Positions 43,510-50,129 of a stretch of 64,000 nt of DNA are shown one piece after another. Position numbers and translations under genes: made by a program. Below the pieces are notes generated by a model that saw only the letters and a program-made list of their open reading frames with translations, searched no databases and was not told the DNA's origin. Source of the stretch: Ranitomeya imitator (lineage: Eukaryota); assembly GCF_032444005.1 (NCBI RefSeq), contig NC_091291.1, positions 7,998,001 through 8,062,000 of the forward strand. Reading direction: 5' to 3'. Within the stretch, counting starts at the first letter, position 1. Each line of letters begins with the position of its first letter.

Positions 43510-43911
43510 CTTCAGGATTGCATAGACCCCTCTGGCTGTTATAACCTGCTGCACACGGGATGTCACCAGACACCGGCTTGTGGCCGCTCCTGAGGAATCC
43601 GAGCCCAGCCCTCATGGCGTTGGCCCCCAGGTCACTAATATTCTTAGGTCCACTGCCTTCTTCACATCTGACCAAAGTTTCTCCTTCAGGTCCACACTAG
43701 GCCCCCACTCCAGAATCTTCTGTGATGTCTTCTGGCACCAAACATCGCTGGACTGTGAGGCGCTGGAATCATTGCTAGATGGAAAGTTCCATTACCCCAG
43801 AGCATCAGCTCCGCACACAAGGAAGGCATTCTCCTAGGATTTCTGACATTCTAATCCATTGTCACATTCAGATTTCCAGTATCCAAAGAAGCAAAACTAT
43901 TGAGTATCGCT
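43510..43911 (-). pseudogene. Fossil Tc1 transposase 3' half
   Basis: Degenerate [39 protein letters not shown], IPQER and QQVITARG segments in Tc1 order, with frameshifts. Confidence 0.8.
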
Positions 43912-46900
43912 GAGCCTCCACCATGCTTCACTGTATACATCACAGAGCCTCCACCATGCTTCACTGTATACATCACAAGGCCTCCACCATGCTTCACTGT
44001 ATACATCACAGAGCCTCCACCATGCTTCACTGTATACATCACAAGGCCTCCACCATGCTTCACTGTATATATCAGAGCCTCATCCATGCTTCACTGTACA
44101 CATCACAGAGCCTCCACCATGCTTCACTGTATACATCACAGAGCCTCCACCATGCTTCACTGTATACATCACAGAGCCTCCACCATGCTTCACTGTATAT
44201 ATCACAGAGCCTCCACCATGCTTCACTGTATACATCACAGAGCCTCCACCATGCTTCACTGTATACATCACAGAGCCTCCACCATGCTTCACTGTATACA
44301 TCACAGAGCCTCCACCATGCTTCACTGTATACATCACAGAGCCTCCACCATGCTTCACTGTATACATCACAGAGCCTCCACCATGCTTCACTGTATACAT
44401 CACAGAGCCTCCACCATGCTTCACTGTATATATCACAGAGCCTCCACCATGCTTCACTGTATACATCACAGGGCCTCCACCATGCTTCACTGTATACATC
44501 ACAGAGCCTCCACCATGCTTCACTGTATACATCACAGAGCCTCCACCATGCTTCACTGTATACATCACAGGGCCTCCACCATGCTTTACTGTATACATCA
44601 CAGAACCTCCATCATGCTTCACTGTATACATCACAGAACCTCCATCATGCTTCACTGTATACATCACAGGGCCTCCACCATGCTTCACTGTATACATCAC
44701 AGGGCCTCATCCATGCTTCACTGTATACATCACAGGGCCTCCACCACGCTTCACTGTATACATCACAGAGCCTCCACCATGCTTCACTATATACATCACA
44801 GGGCCTCCACCATGCTTCACTATATACATCACAGGGCCTCCACCATGCTTCACTATACATATCAGAGTTTCCCCCATGCTTCACTGTATACATCTCATAC
44901 ACGCTTCACTGTATGTACCACAGAGCCTCCACCATGCTTCACAGTACACATCACAGAGCTTCTACCATGCTCCACTGTACACATCAGAGCTTCCCCCATG
45001 CTTCACTGTATGCATCACAAAGCCTCCGCCATGCTTCACTGTATACATTCACAAAGCCTCATCCATGCTTCACTGTACATATCCCAGAGCTTCCACTATG
45101 CTTCACTGTATACATCACAGAGCCTCATCCATGCTTCACTGTATACATCAGAGCTTCCACCATGCTGCCCTGTACACACAGAACCTCCGCCATGCAGCCC
45201 TGTATACATCACACAGCTCCACCATGCTTAACTGTATACATCACAGGGCCTCCGCCATACTTCACTGTATATATCACTGATCCTCCACCATGCTTGACTG
45301 TATATATCACTGATCCTCTGCCATGCTTCACTGTATACATCACAGAGCCTCCACCATGCTTCACTGTATATATCACAGAGCCTCCGCCATGCTTTACTGT
45401 ATACATCACAGAACCTCCATCATGCTTCACTGTATACATCACAGAGCCTCTACCATGCTTTACTGTATATATCACTGATCCTCCGTTATGCTTCACTGTA
45501 TACATCACTGATCCTCCGCCATGCTTCACTGTATACATCACAGGGCCTCCACCATGCTTCACTGTATACATCACAGAGCCTCATCCATGCTTTACTGTAT
45601 ATATCACTGATCCTCCGCCATACTTCACTGTATACATCACTGATCCTCCGCCATGCTTCACTGTATACATCACAGGGCCTCCACCATGCTTCACTGTATA
45701 TATCACAGAGCCTCATCCATGCTTTACTGTATATATCACAGAACCTCTACCATACTTCACTGTATATTGTGAGCCTCCGCCATGCTTCACTGTATACATC
45801 ACACAACCTCCACCATACTTCACTGTATATTGTGATCCTCTGCCATGATTCACTGTATATATCACAGAGCCTCCACCATGCTTCACTGCATACATCACAG
45901 GGCCTCCACCATGCTTCACTGTATACATCACTGATCCTCCACCATGCTTCACTGTATATATCACTGATCCTCCGCCATGCTTCACTGTATATATCACAGA
46001 GCCTCCACCATGCTTCACTGCATACATCACAGAGCCTCCACCATGCTTCACTGTATACATCACTGATCCTCCACCATGCTTCACTGTATATATCACTGAT
46101 CCTCCGCCATGCTTCACTGTATACATCACTGATCCTCCACCATGCTTCACTGTATATATCACTGATCCTCCGCCATGCTTCACTGTATATATCACAGAGC
46201 CTCCACCATGCTTCACTGCATACATCACAGGGCCTCCACCATGCTTCACTGTATACATCACTGATCCTCCACCATGCTTCACTGTATATATCACTGATCC
46301 TCCGCCATGCTTCACTGTATACATCACTGATCCTCCACCATGCTTCACTGTATATATCACTGATCCTCCGCCATGCTTCACTGTATATATCACAGAGCCT
46401 CCACCATGCTTCACTGCATACATCACAGGGCCTCCACCATACTTCACTGTAAACATCACTGATCCTCCACCATGCTTCACTGTATATATCACTGATCCTC
46501 CGCCATGCTTCACTGTATATATCACTGATCCTCCGCCATGCTTCACTGTATATATCACAGAGCCTCCATCATACTTCACTGTATACATCACTGATCCTCC
46601 ACCATGCTTCACTGTATACATCACTGATCCTCCACCATGCTTCACTGTATACATCACTGATCCTCCACCATGCTTCACTGTATATATCACAGAGCCTCCA
46701 CCATGCTTCACTGTATATATCACAGAGCCTCCACCATGCTTCACTGCATACATCACAGGGCCTCCACCATGCTTCACTGCATACATCACAGGGCCTCCAC
46801 CATGCTTCACTGTATACATCACAGGGCCTCCACCATGCTTCACTGCATACATCACTGATCCTCCACCATGCTTCACTGTATATATCACAGAGCCTCCACC

Positions 46901-49771
46901 ATGCTTCACTGTATACATCACTGATCCTCCACCATGCTTCACTGTATATATCACAGAGCCTCCACCATGCTTCACTGTATATATCACTGATCCTCCGCCA
47001 TGCTTCACTGTATATATCACAGAGCCTCCACCATGCTTCACTGCATACATCACAGGGCCTCCACCATACTTCACTGTAAACATCACTGATCCTCCGCCAT
47101 GCTTCACTGTATATATCACAGAGCCTCCACCATGCTTCACTGCATACATCACAGGGCCTCCACCATACTTCACTGTAAACATCACTGATCCTCCACCATG
47201 CTTCACTGTATATATCACTGATCCTCCGCCATGCTTCACTGTATACATCACTGATCCTCCACCATGCTTCACTGTATATATCACAGAGCCTCCACCATGC
47301 TTCACTGTATATATCACAGAGCCTCCACCATGCTTCACTGCATACATCACAGGGCCTCCACCATGCTTCACTGCATACATCACAGGGCCTCCACCATGCT
47401 TCACTGCATACATCACAGGGCCTCCACCATACTTCACTGTAAACATCACTGATCCTCCACCATGCTTCACTGTATATATCACTGATCCTCCGCCATGCTT
47501 CACTGTATATATCACTGATCCTCCGCCATGCTTCACTGTATATATCACAGAGCCTCCACCATGCTTCACTGCATACATCACAGGGCCTCCACCATACTTC
47601 ACTGTAAACATCACTGATCCTCCACCATGCTTCACTGTATATATCACTGATCCTCCGCCATGCTTCACTGTATATATCACTGATCCTCCGCCATGCTTCA
47701 CTGTATATATCACAGAGCCTCCATCATACTTCACTGTATACATCACTGATCCTCCACCATGCTTCACTGTATACATCACTGATCCTCCACCATGCTTCAC
47801 TGTATACATCACTGATCCTCCACCATGCTTCACTGTACATATCACAGAGCCTCCACCATGCTTCACTGTATATATCACAGAGCCTCCACCATGCTTCACT
47901 GCATACATCACAGGGCCTCCACCATGCTTCACTGCATACATCACAGGGCCTCCACCATGCTTCACTGTATACATCACAGGGCCTCCACCATGCTTCACTG
48001 CATACATCACTGATCCTCCACCATACTTCACTGTATATATCACAGAGCCTCCACCATGCTTCACTGTATACATCACTGATCCTCCACCATGCTTCACTGT
48101 ATATATCACAGAGCCTCCACCATGCTTCACTGTATATATCACTGATCCTCCGCCATGCTTCACTGTATATATCACAGAGCCTCCGCCATGCTTCACTGCA
48201 TACATCACAGGGCCTCCACCATACTTCACTGTAAACATCACTGATCCTCCACCATGCTTCACTGTATATATCACAGAGCCTCCACCATACTTCACTGTAT
48301 ACATCACTGATCCTCCACCATACTTCACTGTATACATCACTGATCCTCCACCATGCTTCACTGTATATATCACTGATCCTCCACCATGCTTCACTGTATA
48401 CATCACTGATCCTCCACCATGCTTCACTGTATATATCACTGATCCTCCGCCATGCTTCACTGTATACATCACAGGGCCTCCACCATGCTTCACTGCATAC
48501 ATCACAGGGCCTCCACCATGCTTCACTGTATACATCACAGGGCCTCCACCATGCTTCACTGCATACATCACAGGGCCTCCGCCATGCTTCACTGTATATA
48601 TCACAGAACCTCCACCATGCTTCACTGTATATATCACAGAGCCTCCACCATGCTTCACTGTATATATCACAGAGCCTCCACCATGCTTCACTGTATATAT
48701 CACAGAACCTCCATCATGCTTCACTGTATACATCACAGAGCCTCCACCATGCTTCACTGTATACATCACAGAGCCTCCACCATGCTTCACTGTATATATC
48801 ACAGAACCTCCACCATGCTTCACTGTATACATCACAGAACCTCCGCCATGCTTCACTGTATACATCACAGGGCCTCCACCATACTTCACTGTATACATCA
48901 CAGGGCCTCCACCATACTTCACTGTATACATCACAGAGCCTCCACCATGCTTCACTGTATATATCACAGAGCCTCCACCATGCTTCACTGTATATATCAC
49001 AGAACCTCCGCCATGCTTCACTGTATACATCACAGGGCCTCCACCATACTTCACTGTATACATCACAGAACCTCCACCACGCTTCACTGTATATTGTGAG
49101 CCTCCACCATGCTTCACTGTATATATCACTGATCCTCCACCATGCTTCACTGTATACATCACAGAGCCTCCACCATGCTTCACTGTATACATCACAGGGC
49201 CTCCACCATACTTCACTGTATACATCACAGAACCTCCACCACGCTTCACTGTATATTGTGAGCCTCCACCATGCTTCACTGTATATATCACTGATCCTCC
49301 ACCATGCTTCACTGTATACATCACAGGGCCTCCACCATACTTCACTGTATACATCACAGAACCTCCACCACGCTTCACTGTATATTGTGAGCCTCCACCA
49401 TGCTTCACTGTATATATCACTGATCCTCCGCCATGCTTCACTGTATACATCACAGAGCCTCCACCATGCTTCACAGTACACATCACAGGGCCTCCACCAT
49501 GCTTCACTGCATACATCACAGGGCCTCCGCCATGCTTCACTGTATATATCACAGAGCCTCCACCATGCTTCACTGCATACATCACAGGGCCTCCGCCATG
49601 CTTCACTGTATACATCACAGGGCCTCCACCATGCTTCACTGCATACATCACAGGGCCTCCACCATGCTTCACTGCATACATCACAGGGCCTCCGCCATGC
49701 TTCACTGTATACATCACAGAACCTCCACCATGCTTCACTGTATATTGTGAGCCTCCGCCATGATTCACTGT
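43912..49771. repeat. 33-bp minisatellite (~178 copies) in the LIN37 5' UTR intron
   Basis: Unit CACAGAGCCTCCACCATGCTTCACTGTATACAT; the minus strand reads [11 protein letters not shown] per unit. Confidence 0.96.
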
Positions 49772-50129
49772 AGGCTTGTGGCAGATTGGAGGTGCCTTTT
49801 CTTGCACTTTTAGGTCAGTAGACTTTATCTCTCGGAGTTCTGCAGACCTCCAGTGTTTATTATGCACCTTACTGTGAGAATTGTATCCTCAGTGCCGGCT
49901 GCCAACAAATCTTACTGCAGTCACTGAAGCCGGCGTCATCTTCTCTGCCGGTATAGCGCGTAGCAGGTTATAACAGCCAGGCGGGCTCTCCTCTGCACGA
50001 AGCTCATAGAGGACGGACACTCCTCCGCCTCCAGCGCTCAGTACAGGAGCTCGGAGACCCCCCCGTGTTACCGTGCACACCCGCGGACTCTCCTCCCGGA
50101 CTCTCCCGGTCTCCGTTACCGACTCAACT

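What the first reader, a model, noticed from the sequence alone, without database searches (positions are those of the whole stretch)
43510..49870. A 5.9-kb minisatellite born from the [10 protein letters not shown] codons of a Tc1 transposase
Seen: the 33-bp unit translates on the minus strand as [11 protein letters not shown], the Tc1 motif also seen as [11 protein letters not shown] at ~57310. At the left edge the array continues directly into the downstream transposase remnant (..[32 protein letters not shown]). The right edge reads ..[11 protein letters not shown], with weaker upstream similarity. Inference: ~178 copies expanded in situ from one 33-bp piece of a dead transposon inside the LIN37 5' UTR intron, giving a traceable TE-to-satellite birth. 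The 3n unit keeps a 1384-codon frame open on the LIN37 sense strand.
Basis: partly seen in the sequence, partly recalled or inferred. Interest (0 to 1): 0.75.

Follow-up and report, generated by a model that had tools for sequence, protein, structure and literature searches.

The report
Tc1-born minisatellite in LIN37 intron
A 5.9-kb tandem repeat filling the first intron of a poison frog's LIN37 gene grew from 11 codons of a dead Tc1 transposon. It is a clear example of an already known process rather than a one-off, because the same codons are tandemly repeated elsewhere in this genome, in a second frog species and in salmon Tc1 copies.

Summary
A 33-bp x ~178 array lies at 43912-49772, and its minus strand reads (M/I)[10 protein letters not shown]. 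Both edges run in register into Tc1-like sequence.

With the array removed in silico, the joined flanks form one collinear chain on a Tc1 transposase consensus (z=11.4). Almost all of that support comes from the left flank (z=9.2; Tc1 positions 219-334) and the edge motif. Right of the edge unit the similarity is not significant.

A spliced RNA contig joins a non-coding exon 1 (ends 50133) to the ATG exon (43364-43432). The array therefore makes up 87% of a 6,700-nt GT-AG 5'UTR intron of LIN37, and that intron is spliced out.

The "single in-situ birth" reading needs correcting:
- A second species carries the same flank and the same flank/array junction, about 8% diverged, so the locus is old.
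- Contigs from both species show other 33-bp tandem arrays of the same Tc1 segment, with junction variants absent from this array.
- Salmonid Tc1-derived proteins carry 2-7 tandem [10 protein letters not shown] units (30 bp).

Growth to ~178 units was local; a 35-unit block is duplicated inside the array. Seeding at this motif is either recurrent or inherited with the transposon.

The 1384-codon ORF says nothing, because five of six frames of the unit lack stops.

Verdict: a new member of a known kind (TE-derived minisatellite), moderate interest. The scan noted similar Tc1-motif arrays at other places in this genome.

The parts
43912..49772 (-). 33-bp minisatellite, ~178 units, minus-strand reading (M/I)[10 protein letters not shown]
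   Evidence: TRF; unit-by-unit parse
49748..49777 (-). Right-edge unit, 30 nt, [10 protein letters not shown]. It keeps the Tc1 proline codon (CCT) where internal units have TAT
43505..43911 (-). Degraded Tc1 transposase remnant downstream of the motif (Tc1 positions ~191-334, the stop region and ~20 nt beyond), with several frameshifts and stops
   Evidence: Frameshift-aware alignment z=9.2 and 5.9; alignment to other genomic copies reaches 43505; the only PDB hit is SB100X residues 129-182, E=0.5, which is weak
49778..49925 (-). Possible upstream Tc1 remnant (FSDCSKIC.., ..HWRS..). The similarity is weak and not significant
   Evidence: z=-0.6 to 2.9; no Pfam or PDB support
43527..43562 (-). 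Patch encoding SRVQQVITARG, near-identical to many other Tc1 copies in the genome. It contains the left arm of a 27-nt inverted match
   Evidence: Summed contig depth 300-430 against 9-15 in the flank, with loose ends on both sides reading CQKLVSGYA.. and ..GCTKY*
49962..49989 (+). Isolated 26-28-nt patch of the same Tc1 C-terminal sequence, in the opposite orientation (27 of 28 identical to 43524-43550). Origin unexplained
   Evidence: (score 39 against 18+-2.2)
43433..50132 (-). LIN37 intron 1 (5'UTR intron), 6,700 nt, GT-AG. The array makes up 87% of it
   Evidence: In run X4 a 294-nt contig lies on 43364-43434, and its loose ends map uniquely to 50135-50164 and 43051-43080. The splice sites were read
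50133..50172 (-). LIN37 exon 1 (non-coding), known 3' part. It sits in a CpG-rich promoter with CCAAT and GC boxes just upstream
   Evidence: 38-nt loose end of the spliced contig; CpG o/e 0.9-1.3 over 49900-50500
43364..43432 (-). LIN37 exon 2, with ATG at 43397-43395 ([11 protein letters not shown])
45713..49867 (-). 1384-codon stop-free frame through the array. A by-product of the 3n period, not a gene
   Evidence: five of six unit frames are open
45892..48200 (-). 35-unit (1,155-bp) block duplicated in tandem inside the array at 92-99% identity
   Evidence: matching TRF sub-rows at 46588 and 47743

Best explanation
A Tc1-family DNA transposon copy lies, long dead, in the first (5'UTR) intron of LIN37. 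The 33 bp that encode [11 protein letters not shown], a conserved stretch of the transposase catalytic domain, were duplicated head to tail. The most likely route is slippage or unequal exchange between the two short V-M codon repeats that bracket this stretch exactly 33 bp apart in intact copies of the family. In a genome that readily amplifies minisatellites, the proto-array then grew locally to ~178 units by repeated unequal exchange, including multi-unit block duplications. Turnover within the array kept its consensus close to the canonical Tc1 codons (K, V, M), while the non-repeated edges decayed to N, A, I. The array is non-coding intronic DNA and is spliced out with the intron; there is no sign that it has a function. 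It is one member of a set of arrays seeded at the same Tc1 motif. Shown: the array anatomy, the Tc1 identity of the left flank, register at both edges, the intron, presence in a second species, and other tandem loci. Inferred: the microhomology mechanism, the order of events and neutrality.
For: Array and register. Collinear joined flanks: z=11.4. Left flank alone: z=9.2 and 5.9. Local growth: a 35-unit block duplicated at 92-99% identity, and a 330-nt stretch in which neighbouring units are 98% alike. Intron and splicing: a spliced contig at depth 52.9 against 2-4 for intronic contigs in the same run, with its loose ends mapped uniquely. Orthologous locus in organism B: a 444-nt contig on 43459-43895 with 35 differences, and a 147-nt contig bridging 43871-43980. 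Other copies read ..KVM-PTVKHGG.. upstream of the motif, and other arrays show SVM|PTV and LVM|STV junctions (loose ends and between-letters). Those junction strings are absent from this array at up to 2 mismatches. Independent parallel in fish: predicted proteins P0002 (O. keta, 7 units), P0003 (5), P0007 (3) and P0004 (2) repeat [10 protein letters not shown], a 30-bp unit bracketed by (T/S)I..SI.
Against: The right flank beyond the edge unit is not significantly Tc1-like. No TIRs or TA duplication were identified, and no flank piece reaches any Pfam hit. The V-M..V-M repeat in intact copies rests on loose-end consensus strings with low agreement (0.5-0.8), not on a curated family consensus. 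Contigs cannot give copy numbers, so how many other arrays exist is unknown. A proto-array inherited with the transposon would explain the shared 33-bp period equally well.
Confidence: 0.72

Rival explanations
1. The first duplication did not happen here. A Tc1 subfamily whose source copy already carried two or more tandem [11 protein letters not shown] units spread by transposition, and each daughter copy, including this one, later expanded its inherited proto-array.
For: Arrays at other loci have the same 33-bp period and the same content, in two species. Fish copies with 2, 3, 5 and 7 units look like such a series. Other notes from this scan report the same motif expanded elsewhere in this genome (unchecked).
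Against: Junction codons differ between arrays (CCT, TCT, TAT). Fish and frog use different periods (30 and 33 bp), each matching its own flanking direct repeat, which fits recurrent slippage. No two-unit frog Tc1 copy was seen directly.
Confidence: 0.3
2. The intron itself was created by the transposon. Tc1 inserted into an originally unspliced LIN37 5'UTR, and splice sites at or near its ends were then recruited, so that the whole insertion with its array is removed from the mRNA.
For: Recognisable Tc1 sequence reaches 43505, which is 72 nt from the acceptor. A weak alignment to a frog Tc1-like ORF would carry the remnant to 50116, which is 16 nt from the donor (z=2.9). The array plus remnant account for nearly all 6,700 nt of the intron.
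Against: The right-hand similarity is not significant with the fish consensus. The stretch 49900-50130 is CpG-rich like the promoter, not CpG-depleted like the remnant. No comparison with LIN37 in species lacking the insertion was possible.
Confidence: 0.12
3. The long open frame is used: the array encodes a repetitive peptide, or acts as a very long upstream ORF in intron-retaining LIN37 transcripts.
For: There is a 1384-codon stop-free frame on the gene's sense strand, with an ATG in most units. Low-level intronic contigs are present in an RNA run.
Against: Five of six frames of the unit are open, so the ORF is expected without selection. The left third of the array has stops in this frame. 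Substitutions among unit variants show no sign of coding constraint (S/P, H/Y, T/A, M/I variants are common). The intron is spliced out. No protein of this kind turned up in the 113-360 aa range that the search with the 206-aa array ORF covers; a product near 1384 aa would lie outside that range.
Confidence: 0.02
4. The resemblance to Tc1 is coincidental: a generic G-rich minisatellite that happens to lie next to an unrelated transposon fragment.
For: The right flank is not demonstrably Tc1. This window is saturated with unrelated minisatellites.
Against: The unit matches 10-11 consecutive residues of the most conserved Tc1 motif. It is in register with a significant downstream Tc1 alignment, and its DNA attracts hundreds of Tc1 contigs.
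Confidence: 0.02

Closest known systems
CficCl-61-40 satellite of Chenopodium, generated from a ~40-bp fragment of the tnp2 transposase domain of the CACTA element Jozin (PMC7320549)
   Same: The monomer is a short piece of transposase coding sequence. Arrays start inside the parental element. The same fragment seeds arrays repeatedly at many element copies.
   Different: That case is a plant CACTA element and a major genome-wide satellite. This one is a vertebrate Tc1 element, a different motif, and a euchromatic intronic minisatellite whose genome-wide weight is unknown.
miDNA4, a Tc1/mariner MITE of Xenopus tropicalis carrying one to many copies of an internal satellite motif (as described in PMC12628747, PMC9659126 and PMC12054243)
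   Same: A frog Tc1/mariner-related element with an internal tandem repeat whose copy number varies between copies.
   Different: The miDNA4 repeat is non-coding and is thought to be a captured pre-existing repeat in a non-autonomous MITE. Here the unit is the transposase's own codons.
TE-derived minisatellites in general, e.g. the 7,276 human minisatellites traced to TEs, and ORF2-derived satellites PROsat and Pvc20 (reviewed in PMC9659126)
   Same: Tandem amplification of an internal TE segment, including coding segments, leaving TE flanks in register.
   Different: Most listed cases come from retroelements or from non-coding TE parts (TIR, LTR, UTR). In that review Tc1-superfamily elements appear only through the whole-element Bari1 clusters, the Mariner-like/satDNA association in Messor and the miDNA4 MITE, none of them a repeat of a transposase coding segment.
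Salmonid Tc1-derived predicted proteins with tandem [10 protein letters not shown] (P0002 Oncorhynchus keta LOC127924608; P0003 O. tshawytscha A0AAZ3Q4Z7; P0007; P0004)
   Same: The same transposase motif is tandemly duplicated in frame inside otherwise collinear Tc1 sequence, bracketed by a two-residue direct repeat.
   Different: The unit is 30 bp, not 33.

Membership tests
Tc1-family (Tc1/mariner superfamily) transposon remnant | Collinear similarity to a DDE (DD34E-type) Tc1 transposase | tested here: met
   Joined flanks against a consensus of 53 full-length Tc1 transposases: positions 54-334, z=11.4. Left flank alone: positions 219-334, z=9.2. The upstream half is not significant on its own.
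Tc1-family (Tc1/mariner superfamily) transposon remnant | Curated domain hit (Pfam DDE_3 / HTH_Tnp_Tc3_2) | tested here: not met
   Nine stop-free flank pieces gave no Pfam family at E<=10. The pieces are short (22-79 aa) and degraded. The intact copy at 16002-17006 does hit both domains.
Tc1-family (Tc1/mariner superfamily) transposon remnant | Terminal inverted repeats and TA target-site duplication | tested here: inconclusive
   No element ends were identified. The only inverted match (43524-43550 / 49962-49989) is C-terminal coding sequence, not a TIR.
Minisatellite | Head-to-tail array of a 10-100-bp unit spanning 0.5 kb to tens of kb, with interspersed variant units | tested here: met
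   33 bp x 178.7 copies, 5,861 bp; variant unit classes and a 35-unit block duplication.
Minisatellite | Length polymorphism between individuals | not testable with these tools
   Only collapsed contigs were available. Long reads across the array would be needed.
TE-derived satellite/minisatellite | Monomer homologous to an internal TE segment, with the array flanked in register by the rest of that TE | tested here: met
   The unit is the [11 protein letters not shown] codons. The left edge continues into Tc1 position 191 onward, and the right edge unit keeps the proline codon.
TE-derived satellite/minisatellite | The same monomer amplified at several loci | tested here: met
   Contigs in runs X1, X3 and X10 show tandem units with junctions (..GTAGACATCACCAAG..) that are absent from this array at up to 2 mismatches. 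The number of loci is unknown.
Spliceosomal 5'UTR intron of LIN37 | GT-AG boundaries, with an RNA contig joining the flanking exons upstream of the start codon | tested here: met
   The X4 contig joins 43364-43434 to 50135 onward and to 43051-43080. LIN37 domain PF15306, E 2.7e-19.

The most novel reading that the evidence does not exclude
The [9 protein letters not shown]-coding stretch of Tc1 transposases may be an intrinsic, recurrent seed for minisatellites across vertebrates. Its period would be set in each Tc1 lineage by short direct repeats bracketing the motif: VM..VM gives 33 bp in dendrobatid frogs, and (T/S)I..SI gives 30 bp in salmonids. With roughly 900,000 Tc1 copies reported for a poison-frog genome (PMC11152451), this and similar Tc1 seeds could be a substantial source of the kb-scale minisatellites that make up about half of this window, and so a route by which DNA transposons inflate frog genomes beyond their own copy number.
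Probability: 0.3. Interest if true: 0.6.

Novelty: new member of a known kind. Interest (0 to 1): 0.4.

Why it matters
The locus shows the birth of a satellite from a transposon with unusual clarity: progenitor codons survive at both edges, one flank is a collinear TE remnant, and the array has internal block duplications. It also shows that a 5.9-kb array is tolerated inside the 5'UTR intron of a conserved cell-cycle gene without blocking splicing. The wider point is recurrence. The same transposase motif has expanded at several frog loci and, independently, in salmonid Tc1 copies. That suggests predictable, microhomology-defined hotspots for minisatellite seeding inside an extremely abundant transposon family. 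The two poison-frog genome papers found here discuss TE content, and the one whose text was searched (PMC11152451) never mentions tandem repeats or satellites, so this class of TE-derived arrays may be under-counted in estimates of what fills these 6-7-Gb genomes.

Tried and rejected
- Pfam on nine flank pieces: nothing.
- PDB sequence search: the left piece hit only SB100X at E=0.5. The right piece hit only an unrelated CurF chain at E=0.63, which shows that this E-value level is noise. The edge piece hit nothing.
- HMMER of the 59-aa left piece against 1.84 billion representatives: one spurious repetitive protein and no Tc1. The remnant is too degraded for single-piece searches.
- blastn and tblastx of the flanks against the two other Tc1-like copies in the window (16 kb and 57 kb): only the HGGGS motif and scattered weak matches, so these are different families.
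- Reading the right flank as a plus-strand or minus-strand Tc1 C-terminus, to explain the 27-nt inverted match: not significant. Alignment to other genomic copies shows that only 26 nt match.
- The search of earlier findings by sequence returned nothing. By words it gave titles only.
- Literature search for Tc1-associated salmon minisatellites: nothing in the held library.
- Depth in read laying was not used as a copy number, following the tool's own warning.

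
Full report
**1. What is there.**

Tandem Repeats Finder reports one array at 43912-49772: period 33, 178.7 copies, 89% matches. I parsed it on the minus strand using the CATGGTGGAGG anchor and found 176 anchors. Of the 175 anchor-to-anchor spacings, 161 are 33 nt, 7 are 30 nt and a few are 31/32/34 nt. In one minus-strand frame the units read (M/I)[10 protein letters not shown].

- The right edge reads ..[23 protein letters not shown]...
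- The left edge reads ..[28 protein letters not shown]. In shifted frames this is followed by ..KILEW....LWSDVKKAV....IPQER.. and ..QQVITARG.
- The 1384-codon open frame at 45713..49867 exists.

Context matters. About 49% of this 64-kb window is long minisatellite, with six arrays of 3 kb or more. A 5.9-kb array is therefore ordinary for this genome, which an earlier follow-up note of this scan calls a poison frog. What is special here is the traceable origin.

**2. Is it a Tc1 piece?**

Direct family searches failed because the flanks are badly degraded:
- Pfam gave no hit on nine stop-free pieces.
- PDB sequence searches stayed at noise level.
- A HMMER search of the best 59-aa piece against 1.84 billion representatives returned no Tc1.

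I therefore obtained 53 full-length Tc1 transposases and built a consensus from them. I aligned this consensus to the flank DNA with my own frameshift-tolerant local alignment, using shuffled flanks as the null.

| Test | Result |
|---|---|
| Left flank 43843->43528 vs fish consensus | Tc1 positions 219-334, score 110, null 49+-6.6, z=9.2 |
| Left flank vs the intact frog Tc1-like ORF at 16002-17006 (a different family) | z=5.9 |
| Right flank without its edge unit, vs fish consensus | z=-0.6 and 1.3 |
| Right flank without its edge unit, vs frog ORF | z=2.3-2.9 |

The joined flanks are collinear with Tc1. The support comes from the downstream half and the edge motif. The upstream half is at best a weak remnant.

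**3. Unit boundaries and a likely mechanism.**

The unit is exactly the 11 codons [11 protein letters not shown].
- The right-edge unit keeps the proline codon CCT, where internal units have TAT.
- The left edge continues after GGC TCA with GCG ATA, which corresponds to the unit's GTG ATG.
- The array consensus carries the canonical Tc1 residues K, V and M, where the non-repeated edges now have N, A and I.

This suggests the duplication happened while the copy was still close to its family sequence. Array turnover then preserved those codons while the flanks decayed (inference).

Contigs from other genomic Tc1 copies that overlap the motif continue upstream as ..AAA GTC ATG CCT ACA GTG.., which reads K-V-M-P-T-V (loose ends at 43968). 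In intact copies a V-M codon pair therefore lies on both sides of the segment, exactly 33 bp apart. That is a plausible microhomology for slippage or unequal exchange. This step is inferred from loose-end consensus strings with low agreement.

**4. Growth was local.**
- The block at about 45,900-47,050 recurs 1,155 bp (35 units) further on at 92-99% identity.
- In the stretch 44242-44570, neighbouring units are 98% alike.
- The stretch 44,900-45,230 is degenerate.

This is the usual signature of unequal exchange at single-unit and multi-unit scale.

**5. Gene context.**

LIN37 lies on the minus strand. Pieces at 41547-41873 and 40809-40907 hit Pfam LIN37 (E 2.7e-19 and 0.0016). The ATG exon reads [11 protein letters not shown].

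In run X4 (same species), a 294-nt contig lies on 43364-43434. Its two loose ends map uniquely to 43051-43080 (the next exon) and to 50135-50164. After allowing for a 2-nt ambiguity, the structure is:
- exon 1 ends at 50133 (..TTTTAAG|GTGAGT);
- the intron spans 43433-50132 (6,700 nt, GT-AG);
- exon 2 is 43364-43432, with ATG at 43397-43395.

The exon 1 region is CpG-rich (o/e 0.9-1.3), whereas the Tc1 remnant and array are CpG-depleted (0.2-0.4).

The array makes up 87% of that intron, and splicing works: the spliced contig has depth 52.9 against 2-4 for intronic contigs in the same run, a rough comparison only.

**6. Not a one-off, and not young.**

In a DNA run of a second species (organism B, X10):
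- a 444-nt contig covers 43459-43895 with 35 differences (8%) at single-copy-like depth;
- a 147-nt contig bridges the flank/array junction (43871-43980).

The Tc1 remnant and at least the start of the array therefore predate the split of the two species.

In addition, 240 contigs (X1, the window's own species) and 333 contigs (X10) match the array part, most at 88-95% likeness.
- At 43936, 63 contigs in X1 and 82 in X10 carry G, the canonical P or S codon, instead of this array's T.
- Several records show consecutive units with junctions such as ..CACTGTAGACATCACCAAGCC.., which reads L-V-M|S-T-V, or ..GGCATCACTGAG.., which reads S-V-M|P.
- The first of these strings is absent from this array at up to 2 mismatches.

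So other 33-bp tandem arrays of the same Tc1 segment exist elsewhere in both species. First-stage notes of this scan list at least two other places in this genome with minisatellites "born from PTVKHGG", plus others from different Tc1 parts. These are unchecked leads, but they are consistent with the read evidence.

**7. An independent parallel in fish.**

I searched a 206-aa stretch of the array ORF against the protein collection. It returned Tc1-derived predicted proteins in which the same motif is tandemly repeated with a 10-residue (30-bp) unit:
- P0002 (Oncorhynchus keta), 7 units;
- P0003 (O. tshawytscha), 5 units;
- P0007, 3 units;
- P0004, 2 units.

In these proteins the unit is bracketed by (T/S)I ... 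SI. P0002 also carries a second tandem repeat, 14 residues x5, in its N-terminal half, so Tc1 copies in salmon expand at other sites too.

**8. The inverted 27-mer.**

43524-43550 and 49962-49989 match in inverted orientation at 27 of 28 positions (score 39 against 18+-2.2 for shuffles).

The left arm lies in the SRVQQVITARG codons. It sits inside a 36-nt patch (43527-43562) that is near-identical to many genomic Tc1 copies. In those copies the neighbouring sequence reads CQKLVSGYA.. on one side and ..GCTKY* on the other.

The right arm matches those copies over only 26 nt. Its surroundings are unrelated and give no significant Tc1 reading on either strand.

It is not a TIR. Whether it is the stump of a second, inverted Tc1 fragment or a short templated patch remains unexplained.

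**9. The ORF.**

Five of the six frames of the consensus unit have no stop. Any 3n array of this unit therefore gives very long ORFs on both strands; there is also a 641-aa ORF on the plus strand. The left third of the array has stops in the motif frame. The ORF is no evidence of coding.

**10. Comparison with what is known.**

Birth of tandem repeats from TEs is well documented (reviews PMC9659126, PMC12628747, PMC6947457).
- The closest analogue is the Chenopodium satellite, generated repeatedly from a ~40-bp fragment of the tnp2 transposase domain of a CACTA element (PMC7320549).
- In frogs, the Tc1/mariner MITE miDNA4 carries a variable internal repeat (described in PMC12628747 and PMC12054243).
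- The poison-frog genome paper I searched reports Tc1 as 6.6% of the assembly (~897,000 elements) and never mentions tandem repeats or satellites (PMC11152451).

This is a new, very clean member of a known kind. The modestly new element is recurrent seeding at the same conserved transposase motif in two vertebrate lineages.

**11. Verdict.**
- Observation: confirmed.
- Interpretation: partly supported. Tc1 origin, register, local expansion and intron placement hold. Uniqueness, recency, the upstream flank and the significance of the ORF do not.
- Confidence in the main explanation: 0.72.
- The main open question is whether the first duplication arose here or came in with the transposon.
- Interest: 0.4.

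Noticed in passing
window 28917-33395 and 58879-62063: Two long arrays (53 and 37.5 copies) of the same 86-bp unit in opposite orientation, on either side of the LIN37 region. The two consensus units are reverse complements of each other after rotation.
   Followed up: partly
window 50897-56048 (with 50577-50905): A 62-bp x 83 array starts about 700 bp upstream of LIN37 exon 1. Every unit carries a CCAAT box (as GATTGGCTG) and a CACGTG E-box. The promoter's own CCAAT region (50223-50240) matches array units in inverted orientation.
   Followed up: no
window 16002-17006 (+): An intact 334-aa Tc1-like transposase ORF with DDE_3 and HTH_Tnp_Tc3_2 domains, from a different family (it has [10 protein letters not shown] instead of TVKHGGGS). 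It may be a young copy.
   Followed up: partly
window 56885-58039 (-): A second degraded Tc1 copy, collinear over transposase positions 17-338 with many frameshifts. It carries [11 protein letters not shown] as a single, unexpanded motif.
   Followed up: partly
window 49962-49989 vs 43524-43550: A 27-of-28-nt inverted match between an isolated patch right of the array and the Tc1 C-terminal codons left of it. Not a TIR; origin unexplained.
   Followed up: yes
whole window: About 31.5 kb of the 64 kb (49%) is minisatellite with units of 28-180 bp, including six arrays of 3-5.9 kb. The one poison-frog genome paper whose text I searched (PMC11152451) never mentions tandem repeats or satellites.
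   Followed up: partly
protein P0002 (Oncorhynchus keta LOC127924608): Besides seven [10 protein letters not shown] units, it has five tandem copies of a 14-residue unit (ISA(A/P)LQAFMVRQKP) in the N-terminal half. One salmon Tc1 copy therefore carries two different internal tandem expansions.
   Followed up: no
window 43300-43393, run X3: A 1,439-nt contig at depth 75 starts at 43393, inside LIN37 exon 2, and runs unspliced through intron 2. The kind of run is only guessed, so this could be DNA or an intron-retaining or alternative-start transcript.
   Followed up: no
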